Virus record (IMG/VR): IMGVR_UViG_3300017991_000048
Location: 124,001-188,000 of that record
Length of the DNA stretch: 64,000 bases
Reading direction: 5' to 3' (one strand)
The notes under the pieces were generated by a model. The model worked only from the letters and a program-made list of their open reading frames with translations. It did not search any database and was not told the origin of the DNA. The position numbers were made by a program, and so were the translations under genes. Shown one piece after another: positions 12,409-31,178 of this stretch; the stretch's first letter is position 1; each line of letters begins with the position of its first letter.

Positions 12409-12469
12409 AGTCTGTTCCGTTCCTTTCACCAGCGTTTGTATCAAAAAAATACTTGTAAGCTGATAAGAT

Positions 12470-15983: not shown

Positions 15984-17699
15984 TCACGGAAACATCACTT
16001 CACACTCAAGCAACAGATCGGCACCTTTGTTGAAAGACTTAACCTTGGCTTTGAACCCGGACACTCCCCTGGTGTTCTTCTTTATGGAAGCTTCCATGAC
16101 CTTTTCAACAGCTTGACGGGCTTTACGAGCAGCGGTGGCGTCCTCAGAAGCTCCTTCGATGGTCAGATAAACAATGGGACCGGAGCCTGCTTTTGCGTCA
16201 GAGGAATAGCCCTCAACTTCAACTTTCTCAATTTCTTTTGCAAGGCTACGCATCCACTTTGCAAGCCACCCTTTATCTTTTTCCATTTCCGCCATTTGTG
16301 CCTCCAAATACCGATTGACAATCTGTTGGGCTGCGGTCTTTTTAGCCGCTGCTTTCGCTTGCCACCTCTGATAGTACTGCTTTTGTTGTGCCCACGGCAA
16401 CGACCGAACCTTGACCTGGGGAAACTGTTTCCGAGACTTTGGGTTGGGGTTCGGAACCATGCTATCCCCAACTTCACGAAGGAACCGCATCCGAGTTTTG
16501 TCTTTGTCAGGTTCTTTCTTCTTCGGCTCTTTCTCCGGTTCTGCCTTTTCCTTCGGCTTCTCTTTCTTTTTCTTGGGAGTCGCTCCTGTAGCTCTTTGGT
16601 GCGCCTCTTCATTCATGCTCTTCACAGCCGTGGCAATATCTCCCTCTTCCGGTTTCTTGGGCAAGCCGCTTAATGCATGACCGTATGAGGTAGGCTTATT
16701 TAGTTTATAAGGGGAAATAGCGTAAAGGATCTTATTGATCTCTTTTGTCGCTTTCTCTTTTTCATCTTCGGACATACCCGCGAGCTTGTTCATCAGGTCT
16801 TTGGCCTTGGCCCGAAGCTTACTGGCTTCTTCGGGCTTGTCGTGCGGCGGTCCTTTACGATAGTGGACGAAGTTATCGGGGGATGCTGATTGAATATCCT
16901 TCAGGGCCTCTTCATTTTTCTCGTACCAGTTAGAAATATCAAACTGGTCCACCATCCGTTTTCCCCGGACCTTGCCACGGGAAAGGTTAGATAGCTCCGT
17001 GTCAGCCTGTTCCGGGTGAAGGAAAATGACTGTAACCTCGTACCCGTTAGATTTGGCGTTATCGATCTGGCCTTTGAAGTCTTGAGCGTCAATATCTTCA
17101 CCAGCCGAGTCAACAATCAGTAAATCCTTGACCTTTTCTATCTTACTGCTAACCGACTCTTCAAACCGGTGACGGGCCTCATCTTTATAACGTTCTTTTG
17201 GTTTGCCCGTCTCTTCGTTCTTTTCTTTAGGATCATCATGCCAGCCACGCATGGACACATAGAAATCTTTGTTGGTTTTTCCGAAAAACTCATCGAAGTC
17301 ATCAGGGAAATCATCATGCCCTACGACTTTACTTAACTCTATACGCTCTCCGTCCTTGGTTTCATACCAGTGATCTGCCAACGCTTTCTTGAAAGTATCC
17401 TTGCCTTTTTCGTGGGCTTCTTTGAGAGCGTCAAAGTGTTTCTGAGCCTCTTCAAACTGGATAGCTCGCAAATGGTTATCTGACTCATCCTGCTCAGGAC
17501 GTTCTGGGATGTCCTCTTCTGTCAGTAAAGGGTTGCCTTCATCATCCACGAGCATCTGTGGCAACTTCCATCCGAACTTGGGTGGCGGCTCCCCTAAAAA
17601 GAAGCCTTTACCCGCTGCCGGTGGTCCCATCATTACCACCATTCGCTTCTTATCGCTTTTGGCGTTTAGATAACGAGCTATGATTCGCTGCCTATTCAT
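15984..17699 (-). CDS. P-loop kinase (zeta-toxin/AAA_33-like) multidomain protein with two RY tags
   Basis: VVMMGPPAAGKG, LIVDSAG, GYEVTVIFL, lid NLSRGKVRGKR; tags RIIARYLNA (N-terminal) and QIVNRYLEA (internal). Confidence 0.65.
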   Translation of the reverse strand: MNRQRIIARYLNAKSDKKRMVVMMGPPAAGKGFFLGEPPPKFGWKLPQMLVDDEGNPLLTEEDIPERPEQDESDNHLRAIQFEEAQKHFDALKEAHEKGKDTFKKALADHWYETKDGERIELSKVVGHDDFPDDFDEFFGKTNKDFYVSMRGWHDDPKEKNEETGKPKERYKDEARHRFEESVSSKIEKVKDLLIVDSAGEDIDAQDFKGQIDNAKSNGYEVTVIFLHPEQADTELSNLSRGKVRGKRMVDQFDISNWYEKNEEALKDIQSASPDNFVHYRKGPPHDKPEEASKLRAKAKDLMNKLAGMSEDEKEKATKEINKILYAISPYKLNKPTSYGHALSGLPKKPEEGDIATAVKSMNEEAHQRATGATPKKKKEKPKEKAEPEKEPKKKEPDKDKTRMRFLREVGDSMVPNPNPKSRKQFPQVKVRSLPWAQQKQYYQRWQAKAAAKKTAAQQIVNRYLEAQMAEMEKDKGWLAKWMRSLAKEIEKVEVEGYSSDAKAGSGPIVYLTIEGASEDATAARKARQAVEKVMEASIKKNTRGVSGFKAKVKSFNKGADLLLECEVMFP

Positions 17700-18351
17700 A
17701 TTGCTCCTTAAGTGCCTTTGCTCTCACCGCTCTATTAAGAACCTTACGAGTATCGTTGATGAGCTTATCAGGGTAATCAGGATCATCACCCATTTCAGCT
17801 TTCAGATCCTTGCCAAAAACTTCAACCTTCTTGGCAAGTGAACGAAGATGATCTCTTAAAGTGTTCTTCAATATTGGCTTTCCTTCGTCCCATGCCTTGA
17901 TTTGGGCTATTGTCCAGTCAATACCAAAAAACCCAGTCGTACCTTTGTCGAAATAGTGCCCCAAGTTAAATGATGTGAGCAAGGGGATAACCCGCTCTTC
18001 AAACTTTTCTAGTAGTTGACGAGTGTCTACTAATACAGCGGGGAGAGGTCCCATGTTAGCCTCTCCTTCGATCTTCAGTGTTGCCTTTACTTTAACAGAC
18101 CCGTCTCTATCCATGGTAAGAGACCCCTCTCCTGCAACTTTGCGCCCGTCTGTTGTGGCCATCTCAAGGGTAAAAGACCCTTTAGATTTCGGCTTGCACT
18201 TAATACTCCCTTTGGGTTCAGTGTTGTGCTTGTTCAATCTGAGCCACATGAGAATTTCATTACGAAAAGGCAAAAATTCATCGAATTCTATGCTGTCCTC
18301 TGTCGGCAGACCAGCGAAGCGTGTGACAACTCGATTTGTAATATCAGGCAT
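17692..18351 (-). CDS. hypothetical protein with N-terminal RVVTRF tag
   Basis: MPDITNRVVTRFAG; GAGGTG SD. Confidence 0.6.
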   Translation of the reverse strand: MPDITNRVVTRFAGLPTEDSIEFDEFLPFRNEILMWLRLNKHNTEPKGSIKCKPKSKGSFTLEMATTDGRKVAGEGSLTMDRDGSVKVKATLKIEGEANMGPLPAVLVDTRQLLEKFEERVIPLLTSFNLGHYFDKGTTGFFGIDWTIAQIKAWDEGKPILKNTLRDHLRSLAKKVEVFGKDLKAEMGDDPDYPDKLINDTRKVLNRAVRAKALKEQYE

Positions 18352-18354
18352 CGT

Positions 18355-21222
18355 TCACCTCTTTACATGAAACTTATCAATAATTGTTCCGTCTTTTAGG
18401 TAGCTACTTTCGAGTCCGGGAACAAGATATTGGGATTTTAATGTGCTGGCTTCATGCCCGACAGCTTTGGCTGTGTCCTCAAGAGCCTCTTTGAACTCAG
18501 CCTTGAGTTGGGTCTGACGTTCTTTACGGTCTGTGGGCAACTGTCCAGTTCTTACTTTCTTGAGCCTCTCTCGCATTTCATGGTTCGCGTGGAACCCCCT
18601 GATATCCTTGGCTGTGATTCCGAAAGGCTTCAGGTAAGCATTGACTTTCTCCGGTGTCACCCGACCGCTGTCCCACTGGAGAAGTCCCGCGCCGTTGTCT
18701 TTCATGGCATCATAAGCGTCCCGTAAGGCTTTTCGTATACTCTTGTCCGTGATTTTCTTCTCTTGTTTGACTCCTGACTTGCCCACGTACTTGATAAAGG
18801 CTGCGTCAGGCTGGAAACTCACGTGTTTACGTTTCCAGCCTGTGACGCCAAAATGACCGTCCTTGGCTGATAAGTCATTGCCCACTCGCTCATAGGTGTG
18901 ATCCATGAGAGCCACAGCGAGTGCTGTTCTTGCTATTTCCGGGTCTGAGGATCTAAGGTCTTTCTTAACTTTAGACCGGAGTTTCTTTATGGCTTGACCA
19001 AGCTTTTGGATACGTTCGGCTTTCTTACGGTTTCGATCGGCTACCTGACGTTCGGAGTAAACATATACCGTTGTCTTGCCCCCATCTTGAGAGGGAACCT
19101 GCTTCTTCTCTTTGTACTTGGCGGTCAGGTAGCGTTGAACAATTTGAGCAGCTATCAAAGTACGTCCTTTCAGACGGGCAAAAAGACGGTCCATCACAGG
19201 GCGAATCTCTGTATCAAAGCGTTCTTCTTCAACATAAGTGTCCGCGTCATAGCTCATTTGGGTAAGCCAGGGGTTAGAGATCCCGGCATCGATTAGCTTA
19301 TTATAAACGTACTGTTCGCACATACGCGCCCAGACTTCGGCGGTACTATGGTAATAGGTTAGCCTTCTATCATCGCCACCCATCATATTTTTGTACTGCT
19401 TTTGGACCTCTTCGTTTAATTCAGGTGGCAGTTCAGACCGGTACGCTGCCTCGTACATGGCATTATAGTAAGGGTGGTCCTTGGGTAAATCAAAATACTC
19501 CTTCCCCGTTAAGCTTTTGATCGCTTTTGGCATCGCCAAATCATAAGGTGAGCCGAGCTTGTCCTCCCACCTTTTGTAATCAGGCGTGGCTAATACAGCG
19601 TCAATAAATTCTACAAGCTCAGGAAATTCACTCTCATGTAGATAGTCTCGACGATACGCTAATGCCTCGCCTTCTCCAAGACGGCTCAACGGGACACCGG
19701 TCAGACCAAAGAGGTCACCAGGGCCACCTTTGATTCCCAACTCTTCTCGTTTCTTGGCTTGTTCAGGGTCTACTTGCTTTTGGATACGGTAAGCCAGTAA
19801 GTCTTCTAAGTAATGAGATAGCTCGTGGGCCAACAACCCCTCATAGTCATCACCAAATGTGACTCTGGGTTGCCACTCGCTTTTGTTATCCCAAACAAAA
19901 TAATGTGCCCTTGTCATGCCGCCTGAAAACTTATTGAATCGAAAGGCTAATTTTCTGTTATGTTTGCCGCAGAACCCTTTACCGAATACAGCTTCTAAAT
20001 CGGTTACGGCTCTAGACACGCGGCCAAGTATCTCTTTACGTTCCTCTTCTGTATAATCATGATCAAACTCTATATCGCCTGTGTCGTGCTTTACTTGAAA
20101 TTCCTCTTCAGTAACAGGTTCATATTGAAGCGGGACAAGAGGCTTCCCTTCTCGGACGGCTTTGTTTTTGGACGCTTGATCAATAATGGTATCAATGTCC
20201 TGGACCATCTCTCTCCCCACTATTTTACGTTCGACCGCTTCTTTAATGATCCGTTGCATTGTGGGAAAAGTTTTGGCTTTGCGTATAGAAGTAAGGAGTT
20301 TTTTCGTCTCACGGGGAAGTGTTTTGCGTGTTTTGTCAATACCTTCCCACCGCCCCACCTTGTTTATATATTCTTCGATCTTGAGGCGTGTAAATTCTGT
20401 GGGGCCGTCTGAATCAAGTTTAGCCTCACTGCGGAGTACCTTTTCAAGGGGAACTTCGTCCTTTCTTCTAATAATATTTAGGTTCGCACCGGCAATGTTT
20501 TGTACTTTTTGAAGACGTCTCGTGACATCTTTATAAGCTTCGAGACGTTCCTCTGGGTCGCTATCCTTATGTTTTTCCCAAACTTGATCTTGTTCAGCCT
20601 CAAGTTTATCAGCCAACTCTCTAAGGTTCTTTTTCTTGTCGGCTGGCATTTCGAACCAAGCGCCTGGATTGGCTGTCTCAGAGAGCGGGGCGTTTGGGGT
20701 CGGTAGCTTGATAACTTTACGGAATAAGGTTCGGAGTTTCGGAGGAATTGTTTTAACCTGGACAATAGTCTCCAGGAACTCTTTGACATCCCGCCCTTCT
20801 GTGCTGTCGAGGTTCCGGGCTATGTAGATGACTCTGAACAACTTGGGGTCGTCAATATCACGATAAGAGAGGTTTCTCAGCCCTCTGAAAGCAAGAGCCA
20901 ACTGCCGCAGAGCCTGTTGTTCCTGTCTTACATTCAAAGCGCCAATGGCTCGTAATGGTCTGATCGCAGGTTTTACAGCAGGGCCAAACCGCCCCTCTTC
21001 AAAAGCGTCTGCGAGGTCTAGACAGGCTTTGACAAAATCTGCATGAAAAGTTTTACGCAGTTGCAAATACTTTTTGATCTCGCTCTCATCGAAGAAAGGG
21101 TTGGTGACAATATAGTTTTGGGCCAACAGCATCGCGATACCGGCTGTTACGATTTCCAGGGTTTCTTCAGAATAAGCCGCTGTTAGATACCGGCCTACTA
21201 CGTTTTCAGAACGTGAAAGCAC
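18355..21222 (-). CDS. LPD1-like (HExxH) domain fused to DNA topoisomerase IB
   Basis: AHELSHYLED and YYHSTAEVWARMCEQY (LPD1-like). C-terminal ~250 aa carry topo IB catalytic residues: ERVGN, YVGKSG, VNAYLK..ITAKDIR, VGH, SQYL. Confidence 0.8.
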   Translation of the reverse strand: MLSRSENVVGRYLTAAYSEETLEIVTAGIAMLLAQNYIVTNPFFDESEIKKYLQLRKTFHADFVKACLDLADAFEEGRFGPAVKPAIRPLRAIGALNVRQEQQALRQLALAFRGLRNLSYRDIDDPKLFRVIYIARNLDSTEGRDVKEFLETIVQVKTIPPKLRTLFRKVIKLPTPNAPLSETANPGAWFEMPADKKKNLRELADKLEAEQDQVWEKHKDSDPEERLEAYKDVTRRLQKVQNIAGANLNIIRRKDEVPLEKVLRSEAKLDSDGPTEFTRLKIEEYINKVGRWEGIDKTRKTLPRETKKLLTSIRKAKTFPTMQRIIKEAVERKIVGREMVQDIDTIIDQASKNKAVREGKPLVPLQYEPVTEEEFQVKHDTGDIEFDHDYTEEERKEILGRVSRAVTDLEAVFGKGFCGKHNRKLAFRFNKFSGGMTRAHYFVWDNKSEWQPRVTFGDDYEGLLAHELSHYLEDLLAYRIQKQVDPEQAKKREELGIKGGPGDLFGLTGVPLSRLGEGEALAYRRDYLHESEFPELVEFIDAVLATPDYKRWEDKLGSPYDLAMPKAIKSLTGKEYFDLPKDHPYYNAMYEAAYRSELPPELNEEVQKQYKNMMGGDDRRLTYYHSTAEVWARMCEQYVYNKLIDAGISNPWLTQMSYDADTYVEEERFDTEIRPVMDRLFARLKGRTLIAAQIVQRYLTAKYKEKKQVPSQDGGKTTVYVYSERQVADRNRKKAERIQKLGQAIKKLRSKVKKDLRSSDPEIARTALAVALMDHTYERVGNDLSAKDGHFGVTGWKRKHVSFQPDAAFIKYVGKSGVKQEKKITDKSIRKALRDAYDAMKDNGAGLLQWDSGRVTPEKVNAYLKPFGITAKDIRGFHANHEMRERLKKVRTGQLPTDRKERQTQLKAEFKEALEDTAKAVGHEASTLKSQYLVPGLESSYLKDGTIIDKFHVKR

Positions 21223-21225
21223 TTG

Positions 21226-21501
21226 TTATTTCTTCTGCTCTTCCTTCTCGCGCCTTTTAGTTTCTTGCACATCCTCTGGAGACATTTTGCGGATTGTGTA
21301 AAGCCCCATGGTCCGATTCTTTTTACGTCCTTTGGGCACAGGCTCAATTTCTATGTAAGGGATACCCCTCTTGTCCAAGTATACCCTGACCACTTTGGCT
21401 CGTTTGTTCTTAAACTTGCCAAAAAGGACGTAATCCCCTGGTTTAAAATGTGCCGTCAGAAACCGGGCAGCTACCCGGTCAGATGAGACTTTTCGGTCCA
21501 T
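21226..21501 (-). CDS. small SH3/KOW-like protein with N-terminal RVAARF tag
   Basis: SSDRVAARFLTA followed by FKPGDYVLFGKFKNKRAKVVRV. Confidence 0.6.
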   Translation of the reverse strand: MDRKVSSDRVAARFLTAHFKPGDYVLFGKFKNKRAKVVRVYLDKRGIPYIEIEPVPKGRKKNRTMGLYTIRKMSPEDVQETKRREKEEQKK

Positions 21502-21526
21502 ACTACCTTGAGCTAATAAATATGGA

Positions 21527-22501
21527 TTAACCCTTCAGGGCTTGTTCATACTCGCTCAATAAACGCTGGAATTCGGAGTAGGGGTCATAAAAAGTCTTAC
21601 CCGGCTCGAACTTTACGGCAAACCCCGCAGCTTGAGTGTGACCACCGCCGCCCTTAGATTTGCAGAACTGGCCACAGTTAAAATCCGTATGGGAGCGGGT
21701 TGAAAAGCTCAGGGTGGCAAGCTCATTTGAGTCTACCCCAATGTACTCAAAACCTACTACTAAGTCGGCTTCATCGTGGAGAGCCTCAGCCGCATCGCTG
21801 CTGTATCTGGCTCCAGGGAAAAGGACGACTCTGGTGCCGAATGGGGTTGTGAACCTGTGAGCACCCTCAACAGCCTTTTCAACATCCCGTTCCAAGCGCT
21901 CTACAAGGATCTGCCCCACTGCCCGTCGATAGTCCCACCAGTCACAAAATTCCCGTGAAAATATCGGCTTTGAACCTGCTATAGTTAGCCACCCCTCTTC
22001 TGGGAAAAACCGTAATGTTTCAGAAAGGATGCAAGCCTTTTTCCAGTCCGGGCTCTGTCTCTGCCACGTGTCACGAATTCCTGTCAGATAGGCTAGCTCC
22101 CGTGCAAGGGAGCACTCATACCGGTTGTCCTGCAAAGGTAACCAAACTTCGTGGAAGGCCAAGACCGCCCCGCAGACCCCCGGCTGGAACAGTTCGTCTC
22201 CGAATACCCCATTCTCCCCGAACGCCTCAACAATCGGCTGTGCTGTCTTATGGTGGTCCAGGATCAGAGCGCCAGCTTCTATGAATTCCTTGTACCTGCT
22301 AGGGTGTGGGGAAAAGTCGCAGAATAACATACCCGGCTCTGGTTCCAACTCCAGGTGCTCCGGGGTATCGTATTGAATGAACCGGACCTCTACATGAGGC
22401 AGTGCGTTTTTACAGAATATGGCAGACGCAAGGCCATCAGCACATGAAGCATGTGAGACGACGATCTTGACTGCATTTAGTTTGTCCGTTGCTAAAGGCA
22501 T
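21527..22501 (-). CDS. DHH/DHHA1 family phosphoesterase
   Basis: HASCADG, FCDFS, LDHHKT, RDTW, STRS, GGGGHTQAAG. Confidence 0.88.
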   Translation of the reverse strand: MPLATDKLNAVKIVVSHASCADGLASAIFCKNALPHVEVRFIQYDTPEHLELEPEPGMLFCDFSPHPSRYKEFIEAGALILDHHKTAQPIVEAFGENGVFGDELFQPGVCGAVLAFHEVWLPLQDNRYECSLARELAYLTGIRDTWQRQSPDWKKACILSETLRFFPEEGWLTIAGSKPIFSREFCDWWDYRRAVGQILVERLERDVEKAVEGAHRFTTPFGTRVVLFPGARYSSDAAEALHDEADLVVGFEYIGVDSNELATLSFSTRSHTDFNCGQFCKSKGGGGHTQAAGFAVKFEPGKTFYDPYSEFQRLLSEYEQALKG

Positions 22502-22505
22502 GTCT

Positions 22506-22516
22506 ATATTACAGTT
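22506..22516 (-). promoter_or_regulatory. putative phage promoter variant AACTGTAATAT
   Basis: 4 nt before ATG 22501. Confidence 0.45.
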
Positions 22517-22531
22517 GAGCGCCCCGATCCT

Positions 22532-22759
22532 CTAGCCTATTAGATGATCCCAGAGAGTTTTTCTCGCGGCTCGCTTGAGAGGGATAATCAAAGTCGCTCC
22601 GTCAAGCATCTGATACAACAACTGTGTTTGTTCAGGATCAATCCAGGCACGATCAGCTTGACGAAGCGCCGTTAACCCTTCTGACGATACTCTTGACATA
22701 GGCACTGACATTTCAGGCTGATCGTGCCGGTCTTTAACTGTTTTCCATCCGGGCTTCAC
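22532..22759 (-). CDS. small hypothetical protein with C-terminal TLWDHL
   Basis: GTGA overlap; ends RKTLWDHLIG. Confidence 0.55.
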   Translation of the reverse strand: MKPGWKTVKDRHDQPEMSVPMSRVSSEGLTALRQADRAWIDPEQTQLLYQMLDGATLIIPLKRAARKTLWDHLIG

Positions 22760-23415: not shown

Positions 23416-23416
23416 A

Positions 23417-23704
23417 TTAGTGTAACTTTTCCTTGTCCTGTTTCAGGATCTCATAAAAGCGCTTCGACACACTCCGGATGTTAATCGGGGGTACACCGGC
23501 TGCCCTCAAGTGCATCTCGTAAAGTCCTTTGAGTAGCTGAGCGCCTGCCTCTCGGTCCTGCATAACCTTCAGGCAGGCGGAGCAGTAGTTCACTTCATCC
23601 GGGGCGCTATCCCCGATCGCTTTCTTTTCAGCGTCAGTCAGCGTGAAGGTTTCGCCAGTTGCATACGGCTTCTGGCATATGATACAAAGGATTTCTTCAG
23701 TCAC
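23417..23704 (-). CDS. Zn-finger hypothetical protein
   Basis: CIIC...YCSAC. Confidence 0.55.
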   Translation of the reverse strand: MTEEILCIICQKPYATGETFTLTDAEKKAIGDSAPDEVNYCSACLKVMQDREAGAQLLKGLYEMHLRAAGVPPINIRSVSKRFYEILKQDKEKLH

Positions 23705-24299
23705 TAAAACGATCTTTCATGTATTGGAAGCCCAGGTTTCCGACTTCCAAGGTTTCGGATTCCAAAGCTTCACTCAGAAGGATGGCCTCTGATAGAGGCA
23801 TGAGAACTTGTGCCGTTTCGAGACGTTCCAACTGATTTTGAAGGTTAATATTGAACTCTATGACGATCTCTGAGCCCTGTGTCAATCTTATGTTTTCGCT
23901 CAACTCATGGGGATGGCACAAAAGAGGATCGCCGGTTGAGAACGTAGCTCGACAATATAGCGGTCTTCTCTCGTATGCGACACACAACTTTTCTTCCAGC
24001 AGTGGGCATGGAATGTTGCTCAGTAGCCAAATGTCGAAGGACAACTTCAATGTTTTGTCCCGATCTGCTTTGAGCTTTTTCTGGAGAGAAGGCGTCCATT
24101 TACCACGCGCAGTCAAATGTCGATACAACAACAGCCCTTCAAGTATTGTGATGAGAAAAGGGTGGTGGCAGCAATAAGAGCAGCCTTTTGAACAGCTAAG
24201 AAGATTGGACCCCTGTCGCAACTGCTGCTCAAACTCTTGCCCCATCTGAGTTTGAAGAGCCTTGGTTTCGGCTAAAGCTTTCTCAAATGGAAGTTTCAT
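23697..24299 (-). CDS. YkgJ / CxxCxxCC Fe-S cluster family protein
   Basis: CSKGCSYCC and CPLL....C.AYERRPLYCR. Confidence 0.85.
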   Translation of the reverse strand: MKLPFEKALAETKALQTQMGQEFEQQLRQGSNLLSCSKGCSYCCHHPFLITILEGLLLYRHLTARGKWTPSLQKKLKADRDKTLKLSFDIWLLSNIPCPLLEEKLCVAYERRPLYCRATFSTGDPLLCHPHELSENIRLTQGSEIVIEFNINLQNQLERLETAQVLMPLSEAILLSEALESETLEVGNLGFQYMKDRFSD

Positions 24300-24793
24300 T
24301 CGTCTTCCAATAGATGGTCGTACAGGTTGGCGGAAGTCCTCTCCGGTGGCGGTCTTTCTCTCACTATCCTCTTCTGGCTCATTGGCTGAAAGTCTCTCGG
24401 TACTTTTATGGGAAAGTTCACCTCCCTGGTGAAAACCTGATACCGGAGAATAAGCTGATCACCGAAGCCCAACCGCAGTTCAGGGTTTAGGTAAAGCGTC
24501 CCGCCTATCTGGAATTCATCAATCTTGGCCCAGTCCAGGAGCCATTTTAAAATGACAACACCCCCAGAGGACGGCCTGTGGACTTCCAGCAACCGTCCTT
24601 TCCTTGGGGGTGTTGTAATAGCAGGCCAATCGCGGAGCGGGTTGCAGGGAATCGGGCAATCCGCTTCCACGCCTAGTATCTGTTTTTCTCTGTCCTGGGA
24701 TTCGATAAACGCCGTATCCGTAGCTGGATCTATTTTATGTACCAACCACAGCTTGGATTGTCGTTGTATCAAATCTCCAGTTTGGATTGCCAT
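24296..24793 (-). CDS. hypothetical protein with C-terminal NLYDHL
   Basis: Ends SANLYDHLLEDE; ATGA overlap. Confidence 0.55.
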   Translation of the reverse strand: MAIQTGDLIQRQSKLWLVHKIDPATDTAFIESQDREKQILGVEADCPIPCNPLRDWPAITTPPRKGRLLEVHRPSSGGVVILKWLLDWAKIDEFQIGGTLYLNPELRLGFGDQLILRYQVFTREVNFPIKVPRDFQPMSQKRIVRERPPPERTSANLYDHLLEDE

Positions 24794-24796
24794 TGC

Positions 24797-25741
24797 CTAA
24801 GAAGAAGGAATGCCAAGATCCTTAGGGTCCATGCCCAACTCAGAAAACATATCATCAGCCGGGGTTGAGCCAACGTCTATGGGTTCTGAAGAAGCGACAA
24901 CGGGTTCCTCCGTAGTAGTCGTCTCTGGTTCAGAAGTTTGAGCTTCTGGAGCTTCTGGTTCCGAAGGCGTGACTGTCTGCTCTGGGGCGGTCTTTACCTC
25001 AGTTGGAGTCGTCTCCTTGACAGTCTCTGGAGCCGTCTCCTTACGCTCTTTTGGGGATTTTGTCCCTTTCCGTACCCAGTCAGCAACCTTGAACCGACCA
25101 CGATCAACCGTTACGAAAATCTTGGCCTTTACAGGGTTACCGTTCTTGTCCTTGACAGTCTTACCTTTGTCGTCCACCTCGTTCGGGGCATCCTTACCAC
25201 CTCGCGCCCCACTGAAAATTGAACTCATGTAAGCTGGAAGATTGTTGCTTGGCGGAGCTTCACCTCTCTCTTCGAGAGCCGCTGCTATATCACGAGCGCC
25301 CATGACCTTTGCTCCCATTATGCGAATAATAGTCTCCGTCAAAGTTAGGCCACCCTTACGGGCGTTTGCGCCTTTCTTTTTCGCGTTGGTCTTGGTGCTC
25401 TTCTTTTTGCTATTACCGCCTGTCTTACGTGCTGACACAGCTTTACGTGCCGCTGGAGCCTTGGCAGGTGGTTTCGGTTCTGGCTTCTTCTCACCGATCA
25501 GCAGCGTTTCAGCTTCCTGCTTGACCTCCGCATATTCAGCGGCGGCTGCATCATACTCAGACTGCGCTACAGCGAGAGCTTTATCAGCTACATCCAGGCG
25601 TCCCTTTGCCTCTTTGAGAGCGGCTTGGACGATGCCCTTAAATTGGCCCTGTAATGTCAGGACCGCTTTTCGTAGCTGGTCTTTGGCTGTGGCGGGTTTC
25701 TTCTTTGCCGGTGCAGCCTTTTTACGTCTTCTATTTCCCAT
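24797..25741 (-). CDS. coiled-coil + winged-HTH-like putative DNA-binding protein
   Basis: AGGAG SD before ATG 25741 (MGNRRRK); basic linker; LTLTETIIRIM...MGARDIAAALEERG...F..VDRGRF; acidic tail. Confidence 0.55.
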   Translation of the reverse strand: MGNRRRKKAAPAKKKPATAKDQLRKAVLTLQGQFKGIVQAALKEAKGRLDVADKALAVAQSEYDAAAAEYAEVKQEAETLLIGEKKPEPKPPAKAPAARKAVSARKTGGNSKKKSTKTNAKKKGANARKGGLTLTETIIRIMGAKVMGARDIAAALEERGEAPPSNNLPAYMSSIFSGARGGKDAPNEVDDKGKTVKDKNGNPVKAKIFVTVDRGRFKVADWVRKGTKSPKERKETAPETVKETTPTEVKTAPEQTVTPSEPEAPEAQTSEPETTTTEEPVVASSEPIDVGSTPADDMFSELGMDPKDLGIPSS

Positions 25742-25903
25742 TTTATTTGGTTCTCCTTTTCCATTTGATACTAGGCTTCTGCCCGTCCCTTTTACATATA
25801 CACCTTTAATCGGTGTTTTGAATCTAACTTCTTTTAAAGTTACACGCAATTAAATTAGGTAAGATTCTGAATTTAGGTCTTAGCGTGTAAATAGTTAGAA
25901 TCG

Positions 25904-26149
25904 TTATGATTCTTTGGTGTTAGGAAATTCCCGGTCCAAATCTACCTCATGGATAATGCCGAGTCTCCGGAGGTGCTGCTCTACCTGATTCGAACTTAAG
26001 GCTTTGCGTAATCCCTCAACTCTCCGGTCTTGACTCTTCTCGGCCCTCAGGATTGCTTGGCGTAATAACTTCTTCCAGCCGTCCTGACGGGTCGGCGGCT
26101 GAATCTGACGTTGAGATCTCTGCGGTTTCTGAATTAGGTGTACGGGCAT
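25904..26149 (-). CDS. hypothetical protein
   Basis: GAGG SD; overlaps the 3' end of 26016..26474 by 134 nt. Confidence 0.45.
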   Translation of the reverse strand: MPVHLIQKPQRSQRQIQPPTRQDGWKKLLRQAILRAEKSQDRRVEGLRKALSSNQVEQHLRRLGIIHEVDLDREFPNTKES

Positions 26150-26474
26150 TTTCTACCTCATTCAATAATCGGGCTTCTATCGAAAGAACCTGATCTAAGG
26201 GGATATCCATCCCGGTTGCAAACAGCCGTAAAAAGACTTGGCGTTGTGTTTCCAGCATGTTCCGTAAGGCTGTGTTCTCAGCTTCGGCCTTTTGTAACGC
26301 TTCGTTTGCAGCTTCCAACTGGATCATCAATTGGTCAATCTTTTCAAGCTCTGGCTTGATCCGTTGAGCCAGTTCAACGACCTCTTGGAGAGGTCCAAGT
26401 GCCGAAAGAATCTGGGTCAACTCTTTTGGTACAGGCTTTTTCTTCTCTTTCGCTCTACGGGTAGCTCGATTCAT
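26016..26474 (-). CDS. coiled-coil hypothetical protein
   Basis: GAGGA SD; MNRATRR start; heptad pattern. Confidence 0.55.
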   Translation of the reverse strand: MNRATRRAKEKKKPVPKELTQILSALGPLQEVVELAQRIKPELEKIDQLMIQLEAANEALQKAEAENTALRNMLETQRQVFLRLFATGMDIPLDQVLSIEARLLNEVENARTPNSETAEISTSDSAADPSGRLEEVITPSNPEGREESRPES

Positions 26475-26480
26475 TATTCC

Positions 26481-26879
26481 TCATTGAGAGAAAGGCGGCT
26501 GCCCACGAAAGACTGCATAGAACGGGATTGAGCCAGGATTGTTAGGCTGATTGAATTGTGCCTGTTCTGCGTCCATCCGCTCCACTACCGGGAGCCGTGG
26601 GGTGGTCCTGGCCAGTTCTAACAGGTGAGGGTCGGAGGTAATTCTTATCAGGTCTTGACGGGCTTTCTCGTCACGCTGGAGAATGTATATAATCTGACAA
26701 TCTTCCAGAGTATCAAGCATACAGACCCCTGGAGCATCCCCATCGGAAGGGCCGTCACCTCTTTCCACCCAAACATTGTCCGAGCCGGGAACGTACAAAT
26801 CACATCGGCTGGTGGGTGCTTCACATTCAGGCAGTTCAGGGCAGACACACGGGGAAGTTTGACAGCTAACACAAGACAT
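26481..26879 (-). CDS. Cys-rich hypothetical protein
   Basis: GAGGTG SD; N-terminal CVSC..PCVC. Confidence 0.55.
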   Translation of the reverse strand: MSCVSCQTSPCVCPELPECEAPTSRCDLYVPGSDNVWVERGDGPSDGDAPGVCMLDTLEDCQIIYILQRDEKARQDLIRITSDPHLLELARTTPRLPVVERMDAEQAQFNQPNNPGSIPFYAVFRGQPPFSQ

Positions 26880-26905
26880 TTTTCACCTCTTAACTAAGCC
26901 GATTC

Positions 26906-27163
26906 TTAGGAGGATAACCAATCTGCCCGGAATATGATAGTGTGGGAGTGCTCTTTTTGACATTGGAGGTCCATCCGCGCATAAAGAAACGGCACTCTAC
27001 GCCTCAGAGCGTGAGCGAAGACTTCGATTTCCTTCTCACATTCAGGGCAGCGAGCATCACGCAGACGCTTTAGCATAGCGTCTACATTAGCTACTGCAAT
27101 GGCTGACTCGACCTCTTCGTCGGTTAGATCTTCTGAATCATCTTCAAGTTCTGGAATAAACAT
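26906..27163 (-). CDS. small Zn-finger protein
   Basis: CPEC...CQKEH. Confidence 0.5.
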   Translation of the reverse strand: MFIPELEDDSEDLTDEEVESAIAVANVDAMLKRLRDARCPECEKEIEVFAHALRRRVPFLYARMDLQCQKEHSHTIIFRADWLSS

Positions 27164-27984
27164 TATGTCGTATCACGTCTTTCGGGGGATAGCTTTTCAT
27201 CCCCGGCATAACAATAGGAACAGTTGTAAGCACATGCTTCATTGATTGTAAAAGGATCAACCATTTTGACACAGCCGCATTCTTCAGTAAGTAAAGGCTT
27301 AGTATCTGTCACGTGATCCCAAAGGTTTCGGTTTATAAAATCAGTTTCCGGGACACAAACCCCCGTCGAGAATAAACCATTCGCTTCTACTAAATCTTGA
27401 TCGTCAGCGCACAGAAAAAGCTGTATCTTACACTTCACAGCCTGTTCTGTCATTTTGTTCAGTATCTCTATTTTCTCTTCGGTAGAACGTGTCTCTGGCA
27501 CCCGGTCATTTTCCTGGAGAAAAGACACATACACGCTCTTTATCCCGGCTCTAACAGCGTAGGAAAGAAGGTCATAGAATCGCGAAAGTACGCTATGAAA
27601 TGGCAACAAGGGAACGGGGCTGAACCGCCAATAGACTTTCTCAAATGTTTCAGAGGCTTGAGACATTAGAATCCCGGCTTGTGTGCTATTTGGTGGGCCG
27701 TCCTCCGCTTCCGTCCATCCGGTAGCGGTCATTTGCACGACCACATTGTAAGGTTCCAGAAGTTTACTACTTTTAATCAAATTCGTAGGATCTTTGGTCC
27801 AGAAAACAAGCCCTAATGTATCTTTGGGGTCCAGGGACCAGATCTCAGGTACGGCTGTTTGAGGGTCAAAAGCCGTCATTTTCCCGGCCAATAGGCGGTC
27901 TATAAACCAGTCCCATTTCCCGGCACAAACATCAGTCCACCGGGAAAGGCTATATGGAAGCCGGGATATGACACCACTCCGCAT
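27163..27984 (-). CDS. DUF1848-like (radical SAM-related) protein
   Basis: SLSRWTD, VFWTKDP, WRFSPV, LCAD, CGC and terminal CAYNCSYCYA. Confidence 0.8.
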   Translation of the reverse strand: MRSGVISRLPYSLSRWTDVCAGKWDWFIDRLLAGKMTAFDPQTAVPEIWSLDPKDTLGLVFWTKDPTNLIKSSKLLEPYNVVVQMTATGWTEAEDGPPNSTQAGILMSQASETFEKVYWRFSPVPLLPFHSVLSRFYDLLSYAVRAGIKSVYVSFLQENDRVPETRSTEEKIEILNKMTEQAVKCKIQLFLCADDQDLVEANGLFSTGVCVPETDFINRNLWDHVTDTKPLLTEECGCVKMVDPFTINEACAYNCSYCYAGDEKLSPERRDTT

Positions 27985-27990
27985 ACCCTA

Positions 27991-28001
27991 GTATTACACC
28001 G
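27991..28001 (-). promoter_or_regulatory. putative phage promoter CGGTGTAATAC
   Basis: 6 nt before ATG 27984. Confidence 0.65.
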
Positions 28002-28021
28002 ATTCGAAGCTAAATCCAGAA

Positions 28022-28480
28022 CTATCTGAGAGGAAACTTCTTAGGTTTACGGACTTTCCTGAAACGGGTCTGCCGAACTTTGGGCCTGTACCCTCTTGAA
28101 ATTGGCTCCACGGTCATATCGAACTTCTTAGCAACCTGGGCCAACTCCGCCAAAGCCGTCCTCTCTGCTGTATCAACAGAGCCACCCTCGTCTACCGGGA
28201 CTTGCAGGTCCACCCGTGTTTCTGTGCGTAGGCCCTTTTCCTCATCAATCCGTGTCAGAAGACCCGATGATTGATGTCCGGTTACTTTCAAAAATATATC
28301 GTGGATCTCTCCGTCGTCGCCTATCACTGGCACAATGGTGCGATTGATAGCCCGAATAACATCGATGTTGAAAGGAATGAGCTTGCGCCCTTCCGCAAAT
28401 AAGACGCTCATCCTATCTACAGCATAGCTGAAGCCAGCAGTTTTGAGATAACGAGAAACAATCTGTTCTGCTGTTTTCAT
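28022..28480 (-). CDS. hypothetical protein with N-terminal QIVSRY tag
   Basis: GAGGA SD before ATG 28480: MKTAEQIVSRYLKTA. Confidence 0.6.
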   Translation of the reverse strand: MKTAEQIVSRYLKTAGFSYAVDRMSVLFAEGRKLIPFNIDVIRAINRTIVPVIGDDGEIHDIFLKVTGHQSSGLLTRIDEEKGLRTETRVDLQVPVDEGGSVDTAERTALAELAQVAKKFDMTVEPISRGYRPKVRQTRFRKVRKPKKFPLR

Positions 28481-28487
28481 AGTATCC

Positions 28488-29303
28488 TCAACGCCACACT
28501 GAGAAATGAGTGTCATATCCGATCTTGTTTTTCTTCAGCCACTCGTCAAACTTGGACCAACTCACATTTTTAAGAACTGTAGGATCGGCGTTTACTATTT
28601 TATAGAGCTTACGGGCTGCTGTTGGCGATGTTGACCCGTAATAAGTATAGTGAGGATCGGCCTGTTGGAAATCGGAACTAGGGCTATACGCTTTGAAGCC
28701 GGTCCACTTGGACATAAAGCTAAAGTCTTTGCCCTCAACTTCTATGGGATCTACATCCTCTGGGACTATGTTAAGATAAAACTCTGTTCTTTCGTGCCAA
28801 TCTTCTTTGCGAAGCCACTCTACATTTTCCTCTGAAACCCCTTTCTCAACACATCTGTCAGCCGCTTTTTCATAAGCGTCCAAAATCTTCTTTTTGATCC
28901 TTTCGTAGTTATCAGAGGAACTCAACTTTGCATCTCGAAGTATGTTTGAAGCGATGAAAGGATCAAACTCACCCATACCTCGACTACTGGGGTTCATCAA
29001 ATCCGCTACTTTGAGCTTTTTCTTACCTTTCTGGGGGAGTTCTTCTAAGAGCCATGTAGTTCTGCTCCAACGTAAGCGAGCATCACGACCCATAAACTTG
29101 CCATCCCAGTCATCCCAACGTCCAGTTCTCCCCTGGAAACGGGCCACAACTCGTTCAGCAGCCTCTTTGAACCGGTCCTTGTTCTTCTGATGCTCTTCGC
29201 GCCACTTCTTGGCGTCTTCAGGACTCATGTTTTCAGTGGGATCAGCGGGTTTACCCTCTTCAAACCGTGAAACTACATCTTCGCTTCGTTGCTCCGTCGC
29301 CAT
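28488..29303 (-). CDS. hypothetical protein with two RF tags
   Basis: AGGAG SD; SEDVVSRFEE and AERVVARFQG. Confidence 0.6.
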   Translation of the reverse strand: MATEQRSEDVVSRFEEGKPADPTENMSPEDAKKWREEHQKNKDRFKEAAERVVARFQGRTGRWDDWDGKFMGRDARLRWSRTTWLLEELPQKGKKKLKVADLMNPSSRGMGEFDPFIASNILRDAKLSSSDNYERIKKKILDAYEKAADRCVEKGVSEENVEWLRKEDWHERTEFYLNIVPEDVDPIEVEGKDFSFMSKWTGFKAYSPSSDFQQADPHYTYYGSTSPTAARKLYKIVNADPTVLKNVSWSKFDEWLKKNKIGYDTHFSVWR

Positions 29304-29316
29304 TATTGACTCCTAT

Positions 29317-30732
29317 CTAAGGCTGTCCCAAAAGTCCTTCAACCATCTTTACTGTTTTTTGATGCCGTCGTTTATCCCAATCTGAGAACTCTTCCGCAGA
29401 GAACTGCTTATCCGGATCAACGATAAACCAGTCAGGATGTATTTCCAGACCACCGGGTTGAGCATCAGCATCCCACCCCTTGGGAAGCAAGTCTCCCACT
29501 TCCCTGGCAATCTGGTTTAGAATAGAAGGGCTGGCTCCTTCGACTTCGATAAACGATCCGGGCCACTCTGAGCCAGCAGGGGTAAAAAGTGTGTCTCTCT
29601 TTATAACACCCCAAACCTTCGTGCTGTACGCAGCCTGACTGAAATCCTTGGTAAGCTGTTCCAGTTTCTTGGTAACAGCGGGAGTCCTACCCAAGCCCCT
29701 GGAAGCTTCACTCATTAGATCACACAAGGTTTCGAGGCTCTTGTACGCTTTGCCTGTATCTTTGGCATTTGTGGCTTTGAGCAGATCCTTTGCGTGACCG
29801 GGCATGTTCCTGGCAGCAAAAGACACAAGGTTCCAAACGACCTCTTTTGCGGTCTTCTGTTGCTCTTCATATCTCCTAACAACTGAAACAGCGGTGGTCA
29901 TATTCGCCTTCTTACTTACAGAACGCATAAGTTCTGACACAAGTTTAGCCTGCTCTGGCGCGTGTTTATGAAAACCTTTGGCGTCTCCTGTAAGTAACTC
30001 CACAAACGCTTCTGCAAATTGCTCACTGTGGTTCCCGGCAGGGTACATTGAAGCTGCGGGTTGATCGAAGCCCCACCCGTCCTTGTGCATCCAACCTTCC
30101 GGTGCCTTTTCTTCCAGGGCATGTCCAATTTCATGCAATAAGACCATCTCATTAGCGTATTCAGGCTCTCGCACCTGGATCTTTTTGAGCTTTGAGTTGT
30201 AGTCGGCTGTCCCTCTGGTTTCGCTCTTGTCGGTGGAAACAATGCCCTTGATGAGCTTTGCGTCTATCAAACCTTGCACCACTGGAAACTTCTTAGCCAG
30301 CCCTCCGAGAAGTTTCCCTATAGGTTCCAAGCCCTTACTGGTTTCGACGGGACTCTTGGCAGCGGGTTTGACTTGTAGCTCCTCACCCGCATGTAGAGCG
30401 CCTTTAAAAGCCAGACTCTTTTCCTTTTCCCACTCCTTTTTGGAACGTTCTCGCTCTTTTTCTTTCTGGCCACGGGTGATCTCGGCTTTGAGTTGATCAG
30501 CTTGATCAGGGCTAAGCTCAAAGCTTTTCATATATTCTCGCCACTTCTCAGGGCTGACTGAAACAGCCACATCCTCATACATCTGGAGCGACGTTTTATT
30601 CTCTACCCTTTTCCGCCACTCGCTCAGAAGGGTGCCCTTTTCCCGCTTTTGCTTGACCGTGTGCTTCTTGGGGTCAGCTTTGGGGTGCTCTTTGAAGTAC
30701 TCCCTCCGAGCCTCTTCTGACGGGAACTCCAT
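29317..30732 (-). CDS. zincin-like metallopeptidase-domain multidomain protein with internal RY tag
   Basis: LLHEIGHALE plus NHSEQFAEAF; internal KKANMTTAVSVVRRYEEQQKTA. Confidence 0.65.
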   Translation of the reverse strand: MEFPSEEARREYFKEHPKADPKKHTVKQKREKGTLLSEWRKRVENKTSLQMYEDVAVSVSPEKWREYMKSFELSPDQADQLKAEITRGQKEKERERSKKEWEKEKSLAFKGALHAGEELQVKPAAKSPVETSKGLEPIGKLLGGLAKKFPVVQGLIDAKLIKGIVSTDKSETRGTADYNSKLKKIQVREPEYANEMVLLHEIGHALEEKAPEGWMHKDGWGFDQPAASMYPAGNHSEQFAEAFVELLTGDAKGFHKHAPEQAKLVSELMRSVSKKANMTTAVSVVRRYEEQQKTAKEVVWNLVSFAARNMPGHAKDLLKATNAKDTGKAYKSLETLCDLMSEASRGLGRTPAVTKKLEQLTKDFSQAAYSTKVWGVIKRDTLFTPAGSEWPGSFIEVEGASPSILNQIAREVGDLLPKGWDADAQPGGLEIHPDWFIVDPDKQFSAEEFSDWDKRRHQKTVKMVEGLLGQP

Positions 30733-31155: not shown

Positions 31156-31178
31156 GCCTTTATGAAAACACAAAAACT

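What the first reader, a model, noticed from the sequence alone, without database searches (positions are those of the whole stretch)
15984..30732. Internal tags mark gene-fusion seams in three further proteins
Seen: in 15984- the internal tag (KKTAAQQIVNRYLEA, about 16300-16340) precedes a distinct ~100-aa C-terminal domain. In 29317- it follows KKAN-M, a Met with an AAGAAGG upstream (about 29900), right after the zincin domain. In 28488- it follows a 40-aa micro-domain. Inference: cargo proteins are assembled like beads on a string from tagged modules that were once separate genes, and are separated by proteolysis or internal translation starts.
Basis: partly seen in the sequence, partly recalled or inferred. 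Interest (0 to 1): 0.6.

Follow-up and report, generated by a model that had tools for sequence, protein, structure and literature searches.

The report
Shared peptide tags mark protein seams
In a 398-kb environmental phage, a short peptide found at the start of about two dozen unrelated proteins also sits at the joints of several multi-part proteins. Related phages cut or join their genes at those same joints, so the tag marks real module boundaries, though its function is still only inferred.

Summary
The window lies in a complete 398,071-bp huge-phage genome. A peptide tag (core [VI][VA]xR[YF]L) sits within the first ~30 residues of 23 ORFs.

**Tag strength.** A matrix built only from those N-terminal copies re-finds internal copies in the 571-aa protein (16.1 bits) and the 271-aa protein (19.1 bits). 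No shuffled proteome reached 15 bits. The 471-aa copy is weak (5.5 bits) and looks like a hybrid with a second leader class.

**Position in the fold.** Structure models place the 571-aa and 471-aa copies in lower-confidence helices between confident folds, not inside domains.

**Comparison with relatives.** Across seven related huge phages and metagenomic homologues, gene starts or ends map onto tags:
- The 271-aa C-module is a stand-alone tagged ORF in three relatives.
- The 571-aa protein is split just after its tag in one contig.
- Zincin-only homologues end where the 471-aa tag begins, and its C-module is a separate ORF in one relative.

So "beads on a string" is well supported.

**Not supported.** An internal translation start has no support. 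Proteolysis, and the idea that these proteins are capsid cargo, remain inference. Tags also occur at C-termini, so I read the tag as a position-independent docking or address helix, closest to the T4 capsid-targeting sequence and to polyvalent proteins.

The parts
15984..17699 (-). 571-aa protein: tag, P-loop (zeta-toxin-like) kinase, disordered linker, PNPNP/SLPW segment, tag, alpha/beta domain
   Evidence: ORF. Pfam Zeta_toxin at residues 164-272, E 6.4e-6. AF2 model. Orthologues at 68-70% identity in G001 and G002.
17658..17696 (-). N-terminal tag of the 571-aa protein (residues 2-14, NRQRIIARYLNAK)
   Evidence: 26.5 bits; seed of the matrix.
16506..16724 (-). Disordered K/E/P-rich linker (residues ~326-398)
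   Evidence: pLDDT below 50. Length-variable in the alignment.
16344..16505 (-). Conserved pre-tag segment (residues 399-452). It is a separable module.
   Evidence: pLDDT ~80. It occurs at the C-end of an unrelated tagged 177-aa ORF in G007, which stops exactly where the tag would begin.
16296..16343 (-). Internal tag of the 571-aa protein (residues 453-468)
   Evidence: 16.1 bits. The R and Y are kept in all 5 homologues. It lies in helix 436-473 at pLDDT 54-58. In L057 the gene is split 8 codons after it.
15987..16268 (-). C-terminal alpha/beta domain (residues 478-571)
   Evidence: pLDDT 73-89. It is a separate 123-aa ORF (P0001) whose ATG overlaps the upstream stop in L057.
28488..29303 (-). 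271-aa protein: micro-domain, tag, C-module
   Evidence: ORF. Comparisons with relatives.
29166..29288 (-). Micro-domain (residues 6-46, starting with a tag-like VVSRFEEGK). It is a mobile ~40-aa unit.
   Evidence: 89% identity to the C-end of genome ORF 294865-296484. There are 1-3 copies in other proteins of G001-G007. Foreign contigs in three runs match nt 29166-29264 only.
29124..29162 (-). Internal tag of the 271-aa protein (residues 48-60)
   Evidence: 19.1 bits. It is the N-terminal tag of the stand-alone orthologues in G001 (233 aa), G002 (226 aa) and G003 (232 aa).
28491..29123 (-). C-module of the 271-aa protein
   Evidence: 55-59% identical stand-alone ORFs in relatives. There is a weak language-model lead to muramidase or lytic transglycosylase (score 0.90, lead only).
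29317..30732 (-). 471-aa protein: 28-aa repeat motif, zincin, Met plus weak tag, helical C-module
   Evidence: ORF. AF2 model. Exhaustive HMMER search. The gene is absent from G001 and G002, lying between the J and H orthologues.
29908..30630 (-). Zincin metallopeptidase-like module (residues ~35-275, HEIGH at 200-204)
   Evidence: pLDDT above 90. H200, E201 and H204 are at least 90% conserved. Solo homologues of 282-333 aa end at positions equivalent to 272-279. Weak fold likeness to M34-type zincins, E ~4e-3.
29857..29901 (-). Met278 plus the tag-like peptide (residues 278-292)
   Evidence: Only 5.5 bits. pLDDT falls to 59-66 here. Contigs from independent runs X3 and X4 are identical across 29820-30038.
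29907..29913 (-). AAGAAGG upstream of Met278. It is the Lys-Lys-Ala codons, not a demonstrated ribosome-binding site.
   Evidence: Sequence. 0 of 354 gene starts have it upstream, and only ~20% carry GGAG or AGGA.
29320..29856 (-). Helical C-module of the 471-aa protein
   Evidence: 36% identity over 59 aa (E 4e-11) to a stand-alone 107-aa ORF of G003. That ORF's likely start Met (an internal Met10 of the called ORF) would lie within 3 residues of Met278. Its leader belongs to the NPRKAYEEA class.
18355..21222 (-). 955-aa protein (context): tag, N-part with HExxH and LPD1, tag (residues 690-702, nt 19117-19155), topoisomerase IB
   Evidence: Pfam LPD1 31.9 bits and Topoisom_I E 6e-26. Internal tag 21.5 bits. 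The TopoIB module starts with the tag in 8 genomes, with varying upstream partners.
21226..21501 (-). 91-aa tagged KOW-like protein (context). It stands alone here and is fused through a tag in relatives.
   Evidence: It is the N-module of G002_101831 (tag at 91), G001_187598 (tag at 86) and the G003 414-aa KOW-tag-TopoIB protein.
28022..28516 (-). 164-aa tagged protein (context; likely start at 28480). It stands alone here and is the C-terminal module of large proteins in relatives.
   Evidence: 59-62% identity to the C-ends of G001_296775 and G002_88268, with no tag at that seam. G003 has a tag directly before it.
30736..31173 (-). 145-aa tagged protein (context)
   Evidence: Tag 25.2 bits. 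Tagged orthologues in G001 and G003.
31179..32432 (-). Phage ClpX-like ATPase heading the run of tagged genes (context)
   Evidence: ClpX-like by sequence reading (zinc-finger CxxC motifs, Walker A GPSGSGKT); not scanned against any family library. Same neighbourhood in G001, G003 and G007. No ClpP family match in the genome.

Best explanation
The tag is a short amphipathic helix, roughly (K-x-A-A)-x-x-[VI]-[VA]-x-R-[YF]-L-x-A. It works as a position-independent address or docking peptide. It is carried by a set of about 25-30 accessory and effector proteins of this huge phage, including a zeta-like kinase, topoisomerase IB, zincins, a CCA-adding enzyme and a KOW protein.

The most likely function is to recruit these proteins to one common phage-encoded receptor. 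My best guess is the assembling capsid interior or scaffold, so that the proteins are packaged and injected with the DNA. This would resemble the T4 capsid-targeting sequence and the virion-borne 'polyvalent proteins'.

Because the tag is a self-contained helix outside the folded domains, in-frame gene fusions and fissions at the tag are tolerated. Modules are therefore strung together or separated at tags as the phage lineage diversifies, and internal tags are kept under selection.

Shown here: the tag family is real, it is conserved as a peptide and not as DNA, it sits between folds, and gene boundaries in relatives fall on it. Inferred: the receptor, the capsid destination, and any later proteolytic release of the modules, possibly by the zincin modules that sit directly upstream of the tag in several proteins or by the head protease.
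For: Tag family and specificity:
- 23 N-terminal tags were found. Non-seed copies score 16-23 bits, against none at 15 bits or more in 20 shuffled proteomes.
- Conservation is at the peptide level only: identical residues share a codon 30% of the time versus 27.5% expected.

Position relative to folds:
- Tags lie in helices at confidence dips between folds.

Seams:
- The solo tagged H-module occurs in G001, G002 and G003.
- The C571 homologue is split after its tag in L057, and the pre-tag module ends at the tag position in G007.
- Zincin-only homologues end at I471 positions 272-279.
- The I471 C-module is a solo ORF in G003.
- The TopoIB module starts with the tag in 8 genomes with 5 different upstream arrangements.
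- The joint chance of 10 such coincidences is about 1.5e-9.

Label-per-polypeptide behaviour:
- G164 gains its own tag when it stands alone.
- One orthologue pair carries the tag at opposite ends.

Selection and content:
- Internal tags are conserved among orthologues.
- The domain content matches polyvalent proteins, with LPD1 above its Pfam cut-off plus zincins (PMC5512222).
- The T4 capsid-targeting sequence is a precedent (PMC5694885).
- An unrelated phage protein (P0010) repeats its own, different N-terminal motif after the same zincin module.
Against: - No tool result places any tagged protein in a virion.
- The one complex prediction (capsid protein plus scaffold plus tagged protein) gave no verdict.
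- Tagged genes are scattered over the genome, not clustered with head genes.
- At least three other leader classes and a C-terminal LWDHL tag exist in the same genome. A single 'capsid' destination may therefore be too simple.
- One solo module (P0001) has no tag.
- Two fused relatives lack a tag at one seam.
- The 471-aa copy is statistically weak.
- The closest cultured relative, Tunturi_5, has no such tags, so there is no experimental anchor.
Confidence: 0.55

Rival explanations
1. The tag is mainly a recognition or cleavage signal for a phage protease, either the head maturation protease or the zincin modules. On this view the multi-module proteins are polyproteins cut at each tag, and N-terminal tags are short propeptides.
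For: - A head maturation protease gene exists.
- Zincin modules sit directly upstream of the tag in E955, I471, G002_33255 and P0010.
- K-x-A-A lies within 8 residues upstream of 9 of 24 internal tags, against 0.7% of background windows.
- Precedent: propeptides cleaved at a motif in T4 and SPN3US (PMC5694885), and autoproteolysis proposed for polyvalent proteins (PMC5512222).
Against: - KTA sites are conserved between orthologues no better than any tripeptide (7 of 24 versus 29%).
- C-terminal tags followed by 2-8 residues make little sense as cleavage sites.
- G003 joins KOW and TopoIB through a tag with no zincin in the chain.
- There are no mass-spectrometry data.
Confidence: 0.2
2. The tag is a handle for the phage-encoded ClpX-like unfoldase or another chaperone, such as the phage GroEL. 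It would mark proteins for timed unfolding, remodelling or degradation rather than for packaging.
For: - A ClpX-like gene heads the operon of tagged genes, and this neighbourhood is kept in G001, G003 and G007.
- ClpX is known (from my own knowledge) to read short terminal peptide motifs at either end of a substrate.
Against: - The genome has no ClpP.
- Most tagged genes are far from clpX.
- No interaction test was run.
Confidence: 0.1
3. Internal tags are neutral relics. The peptide matters only at the N-terminus, or is merely a common linker helix. After a fusion it lingers without function and the modules are never separated.
For: - Relic Met residues precede some internal leaders: I471, G001_289930, and 3 of 5 internal NPRKAFEEAL copies.
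- Two fused relatives have lost the tag before the G164 module.
Against: - The internal tags of C571 and of the TopoIB module keep R and Y across 5-8 genomes in which the proteins are otherwise 55-70% identical and the flanks vary.
- Tags occur at C-termini.
Confidence: 0.1
4. The modules are made separately by internal translation initiation at the tag, as proposed for Met278 near nt 29900.
For: - Met278 has AAGG five bases upstream.
- The likely start Met of the solo G003 homologue (an internal Met10 of the called 107-aa ORF) would lie within 3 residues of it.
Against: - The other internal tags have no Met.
- AAGAAGG is the Lys-Lys-Ala codons and is found upstream of 0 of 354 gene starts. 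Shine-Dalgarno use is weak genome-wide.
- No RNA run holds the locus.
Confidence: 0.05

Closest known systems
T4 capsid-targeting sequence (CTS) of internal proteins IPI-III and Alt (Mullaney and Black 1996, as reviewed in PMC5694885)
   Same: A 10-20-residue peptide shared at the N-terminus of otherwise unrelated proteins of a large phage. It acts as an address that is transferable between proteins.
   Different: The sequence is unrelated. Here the peptide also occurs internally and at C-termini. Packaging and removal by the head protease are not shown. About 25 carriers here, against a handful in T4.
Polyvalent proteins of phages and conjugative elements (Iyer, Burroughs, Anand, de Souza, Aravind 2017; PMC5512222)
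   Same: Multi-domain effector chains with zincin peptidase and LPD domains. The same domains also occur solo in related elements. They are predicted to travel with the DNA and perhaps to be autoprocessed.
   Different: That work does not describe a shared peptide at each junction (a text search for 'linker' and 'N-terminal signal' gave 0 hits). Here the chains are short (2-4 modules), and every seam examined but one carries the same tag.
Encapsulin cargo-loading peptides
   Same: A short peptide on diverse cargo enzymes docks to the inner face of an HK97-fold shell. It tolerates fusion to foreign proteins (from my own knowledge).
   Different: This is a tailed phage with portal, terminase and protease genes. 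The motif is unrelated, and binding to the shell was not shown (one search gave no verdict).
Propeptides and cleaved inner-body or ejection proteins of phiKZ and SPN3US giant phages (PMC5694885, PMC10052503)
   Same: Giant-phage heads carry many ejection proteins. Their N-terminal regions are thought to target them to the prohead and are cut at a short motif.
   Different: Those propeptides are long (often over 100 aa) and are defined by an AXE or SXE cleavage motif. No conserved cleavage motif was found here.

Membership tests
T4-type capsid-targeting sequence | Short peptide shared at the N-terminus of several unrelated proteins of one phage | tested here: met
   23 ORFs carry it within the first ~30 residues, far above shuffles.
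T4-type capsid-targeting sequence | Strictly N-terminal propeptide | tested here: not met
   Internal and C-terminal copies score 16-24 bits.
T4-type capsid-targeting sequence | Removed by the prohead protease at a consensus site | tested here: inconclusive
   A protease gene is present. K-x-A-A is enriched before internal tags, but KTA is not preferentially conserved.
T4-type capsid-targeting sequence | Necessary and sufficient for incorporation into proheads; carriers present in virions | not testable with these tools
   This needs virion proteomics or a reporter-packaging assay. The complex prediction gave no verdict.
Polyvalent proteins (Iyer et al. 2017) | Two or more unrelated effector domains in one phage polypeptide | tested here: met
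   Kinase plus alpha/beta domain; zincin plus helical module; HExxH/LPD1 plus TopoIB.
Polyvalent proteins (Iyer et al. 2017) | Hallmark domains (zincin peptidase, LPD families) | tested here: met
   LPD1 scores 31.9 bits against a cut-off of 27 in the 955-aa protein. HEIGH zincin with conserved H200, E201 and H204 in the 471-aa protein. None was found in the 271-aa protein.
Polyvalent proteins (Iyer et al. 2017) | The same domains occur solo in related elements | tested here: met
Polyvalent proteins (Iyer et al. 2017) | Encoded with virion or packaging genes and delivered with the DNA | tested here: inconclusive
   Some tagged genes flank the head module (genome 298933, 301191, 320934, 321335). 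Those in the window sit beside clpX and replication genes.
Encapsulin cargo-loading peptide | An encapsulin shell gene without portal or tail genes, with the cargo peptide docking to the shell interior | tested here: not met
   The genome has portal, terminase, protease and tail genes. Docking is untested (one search gave no verdict).
Protease-processed viral polyprotein | A conserved cleavage site at every module junction, with products seen separately | tested here: inconclusive
   The tag is present at most junctions, but no conserved scissile motif was found. There are no protein-level data.

The most novel reading that the evidence does not exclude
This clade of huge phages runs a peptide 'zip-code' system. 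It has several classes of short terminal peptides: the RVVxRYL class, an NPRKAFEEAL class, an MDKIASP..L class, a YSYDxRKTA class and a C-terminal LWDHL class. Each class would address dozens of accessory proteins to a distinct receptor or compartment. Because the codes are autonomous helices, they would double as evolutionary joints where genes are fused, split and re-addressed in frame (for example, the leader swap seen in the 471-aa protein). If so, the tags are both a sorting system and the grammar by which polyvalent proteins are built.
Probability: 0.3. Interest if true: 0.8.

Novelty: new variant of a known kind. Interest (0 to 1): 0.6.

Why it matters
Huge phages carry hundreds of unexplained accessory genes. 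A readable peptide label shared by about 25 of them would sort that dark matter into one functional class, probably proteins that travel to one place and possibly into the host with the DNA. It would also give a transferable handle for loading foreign proteins, as the T4 capsid-targeting sequence did.

The comparative result also shows how multi-domain 'polyvalent' proteins are assembled. Fusion and fission take place at autonomous tag helices. This is a concrete rule that can be tested across the roughly 580 related contigs in IMG/VR.

The practical value is limited for now because no tagged phage of this clade is in culture.

Tried and rejected
- **DNA-level repeat or recombination site.** Rejected. 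Tag copies are 45% identical as DNA, and codon sharing is at expectation.
- **KTA as a conserved protease site.** No support. The tripeptide is only 1.7-fold enriched.
- **Shine-Dalgarno-led internal start at 29900.** No support.
- **Complex prediction (capsid protein + scaffold + 91-aa tagged protein).** No verdict, score 0.22 against a mark of 0.34. This is not evidence either way.
- **PHROGs.** Gave nothing for any tagged protein.
- **Searches for the 471-aa protein.** The viral-contig scan found nothing, and the word search with its C-module found nothing. I therefore used the one exhaustive search on it.
- **Foldseek against PDB.** Only weak rows: zincin versus M34-type peptidases at E ~4e-3, and kinase versus PezT/adenylate kinases.
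- **Atlas lead.** Muramidase or SLT for the 271-aa C-module is at the noise border.
- **Cultured relative Tunturi_5.** No TopoIB homologue, no tag, and no enriched N-terminal motif.
- **RNA evidence.** No RNA run holds the locus.
- **Literature.** Searches found no description of this motif.

Compliance: only table 11 was used. Read laying was given 3,201 letters.

Full report
**Setting.**
- The window is bases 124,001-188,000 of a 398,071-bp IMG/VR virus record with direct terminal repeats, rated complete.
- The genome encodes DNA polymerase, helicases and tail proteins in the window.
- Elsewhere it encodes a 292-aa major head protein, a Q-rich 399-aa scaffold-like protein, a head maturation protease, a portal and a terminase.
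- The head protein has 581 relatives in IMG/VR; the 80 loci kept are at least 90% identical.
- Named relatives are an uncultured 485-kb phage (84% identity), Tunturiibacter phage Tunturi_5 (48%) and Bacillus phage G (40%).
- Identical DNA occurs in sediment and seawater metagenome runs.

**The tag.**
- A regular-expression scan, followed by a position matrix, found 23 ORFs with the core [VI][VA]xR[YF] plus flanks within the first ~30 residues.
- The matrix was built from those N-terminal copies only. Scanned over the whole proteome, it returned four further copies at 16 bits or more:
  - residue 690 of the 955-aa protein (21.5 bits);
  - residue 48 of the 271-aa protein (19.1 bits);
  - residue 456 of the 571-aa protein (16.1 bits);
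  - a C-terminal copy in genome ORF 52-441 (23.2 bits).
- Twenty shuffled proteomes gave no hit at 15 bits or more, 0.8 per proteome at 12 or more, and 4.2 at 9 or more.
- The copy in the 471-aa protein scores 5.5 bits, so it is not significant by motif alone.
- The tag is conserved as protein, not as DNA. Copies are 45% identical in nucleotides, and identical residues use the same codon 30% of the time against 27.5% expected.
- Carriers include a zeta-toxin-like P-loop kinase, an LPD1-plus-topoisomerase IB protein, a KOW-like protein (all), a CCA-adding/poly(A)-polymerase-HD enzyme and a DUF5662 protein.
- The tag is absent from the capsid protein, the portal, the terminase and the ClpX-like protein, and only faint matches (6.3 bits or less) occur in the scaffold-like protein and the protease.

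**Where the internal copies sit in the fold.**

*571-aa protein* (6-sequence alignment, mean pLDDT 57):
- residues 326-399 are disordered;
- a conserved segment at 399-450 is modelled at pLDDT ~80;
- a long helix at 436-473 has its confidence dip (54-58) exactly over the tag;
- an alpha/beta domain follows at 478-571 (pLDDT 73-89).

*471-aa protein* (14-sequence alignment, mean pLDDT 75):
- the zincin fold spans 35-270 at pLDDT above 90;
- confidence falls to 59-66 over 271-290, which holds Met278 and the tag-like peptide;
- the remainder is a lower-confidence helical module.

Neither copy lies inside a confident globular fold.

**Are the modules found apart?** I fetched two relatives in full (G001, 411,618 bp; G002, a 208,486-bp fragment). 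I probed five more (G003-G007).

*271-aa protein.*
- Residues 51-271 form a stand-alone ORF whose N-terminus is the tag in G001 (233 aa), G002 (226 aa) and G003 (232 aa).
- The 40-aa micro-domain is a separate mobile unit. It recurs at the C-end of a 539-aa protein of the same genome at 89% identity, and in 1-3 copies in other proteins of every relative.
- Foreign contigs in three runs match only nt 29166-29264, which is the micro-domain up to the tag.

*571-aa protein.*
- It is fused, with the tag kept, in G001, G002 and a JGI fragment.
- In an 11-kb Logan contig (L057) the gene is split. The upstream ORF ends 8 codons after the tag, and the ATG of the downstream ORF overlaps the stop (ATGCCTAG). 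The downstream product, P0001, is the alpha/beta domain.
- In G007 the pre-tag segment ends a different tagged protein, which stops where the tag would start.

*471-aa protein.*
- It is absent from G001 and G002, where the J and H orthologues are adjacent.
- The exhaustive HMMER search found the zincin module alone in proteins of 282-333 aa whose ends map to residues 272-279. It also found the module embedded in 449-1100-aa proteins.
- The C-module matches a 107-aa stand-alone ORF of G003 at 36% identity over 59 residues (E 4e-11). That ORF's likely start Met (an internal Met10 of the called ORF) would lie within 3 residues of Met278.
- That ORF's leader belongs to a second class (NPRKAYEEA). 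The 471-aa 'tag' therefore looks like a hybrid of the two classes.

**Further seams.**
- The topoisomerase IB module begins with the tag in all eight genomes, while what precedes it varies:
  - nothing in G004, G005 and G006;
  - a second tag in G001;
  - the KOW module in G003;
  - a ~470-aa part in G007;
  - the HExxH/LPD1 part in G000 and G002.
- The 91-aa KOW protein stands alone here but is followed by a tag and a zincin in G001 and G002.
- The 164-aa protein stands alone with its own tag here. It is the C-terminal module of large proteins elsewhere, with a tag directly before it in G003 but none in G001 and G002.
- The orthologue of ORF 52-441 in G001 carries the tag at the N-terminus instead of the C-terminus.
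- G002 has proteins that end right after a tag.
- Ten breakpoints fall within 12 residues of a tag. A rough uniform null gives 1.5e-9. There are two clear misses.

**What this means.**
It behaves as an autonomous unit that may stay with either neighbour. It also behaves as a per-polypeptide label, because solo modules almost always carry one.
- This pattern, the amphipathic helix prediction and the conservation of internal copies together point to a docking or address function.
- The capsid destination rests on analogy with the T4 capsid-targeting sequence (PMC5694885) and with polyvalent proteins (PMC5512222). The latter share the LPD1 and zincin content and the solo-versus-fused pattern seen here.
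- An independent parallel supports function at the junction. A metagenomic homologue (P0010) repeats its own, different N-terminal motif directly after the same zincin module, again preceded by Met.

**How the modules might be separated.**
- An internal start has no support.
- Proteolysis is plausible. Zincins lie immediately upstream of tags in four proteins. K-x-A-A precedes 9 of 24 internal tags against 0.7% of background windows. However, the simplest candidate site is not preferentially conserved, and C-terminal tags argue that cleavage is not the tag's primary role.
- The complex prediction for a capsid or scaffold receptor gave no verdict.
- A ClpX-like gene heads the tagged operon in several relatives, but there is no ClpP in the genome.

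**Novelty.**
- I found no description of this motif or of junction tags in the literature searched.
- The principle (address peptides and domain accretion from solo genes) is known. The combination, with the same address peptide marking the seams of polyvalent-like proteins in a large uncultured clade, is a new variant.

Noticed in passing
Genome-wide. In the window: 22532-22759(-) and 24296-24793(-). Most copies lie at genome 27-105 kb.: 32 proteins end with (T/N)LWDH(L/V) within 10 residues of the C-terminus. The tripeptide WDH occurs 37 times against 2.5 expected. This is a C-terminal shared tag. One protein (genome 36201-36884) carries both this tag and the N-terminal tag.
   Followed up: partly
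Genome ORFs 273204, 273491, 371205, 267774 and 249901 (N-terminal); 267956 position 177 and 268949 positions 503 and 621 (internal): A second leader class, M-NPRKAFEEAL, shows the same behaviour. It is N-terminal in small proteins and internal in larger ones, where it is often preceded by a relic Met (KTAM-, ETSM-). It is also present in G001 and G003.
   Followed up: partly
Window 12470-13183(+) and 12022-12477(-); genome 25225, 26709, 33291 and 300664: A third shared N-terminal module of ~42 residues (MDKIASPxDLAxELxxLL...) is 45-65% identical among six otherwise different proteins.
   Followed up: no
Genome 298380, 299548, 300022 and 301699 (next to the head module): Small proteins share the N-terminus M-x-YSYDxRKTA or DxNRWKTA. 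This may be a propeptide class of head-associated proteins.
   Followed up: no
Window 30649-30732(-); genome 268949-271990 (3 copies); G002_160377; database proteins P0016-P0032: A ~28-aa motif, FPSEEARxxYLxEHPKADPKKHTV, opens the 471-aa protein. It is repeated 2-3 times in other proteins here and in many metagenomic proteins. Its function is unknown.
   Followed up: partly
Genome 305834-306712 (major head protein), residues ~10-22: The capsid protein N-arm reads QQVISEYIKTAAG. This resembles the tag (compare EQIVSRYLKTAG of the 164-aa protein) but has Glu in place of the invariant Arg. It may be coincidence, or a hint at how tags dock.
   Followed up: no
Window 31179-32432(-): A phage ClpX-like gene sits directly upstream of the tagged genes. 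This neighbourhood is conserved in G001, G003 and G007, and there is no ClpP anywhere in the genome.
   Followed up: partly
Genome 248288-249712(-): A tagged CCA-adding/poly(A)-polymerase enzyme with an HD domain. It is 69% identical to, and also tagged in, its G001 counterpart.
   Followed up: no
P0007 (1100-aa metagenomic homologue of the zincin module): The zincin module is flanked on both sides by a repeated ~35-aa motif (GW..IP......G.RK....GWDYWYPDQHE.HH). This is another case of a short repeat bracketing a module in a polyvalent-type protein.
   Followed up: no
Window, upstream of many gene starts: GGTGTA and GTGTAA pentamers are 5-9-fold enriched 5-20 nt upstream of starts, alongside weak Shine-Dalgarno use. 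This may be a phage promoter or translation signal.
   Followed up: no
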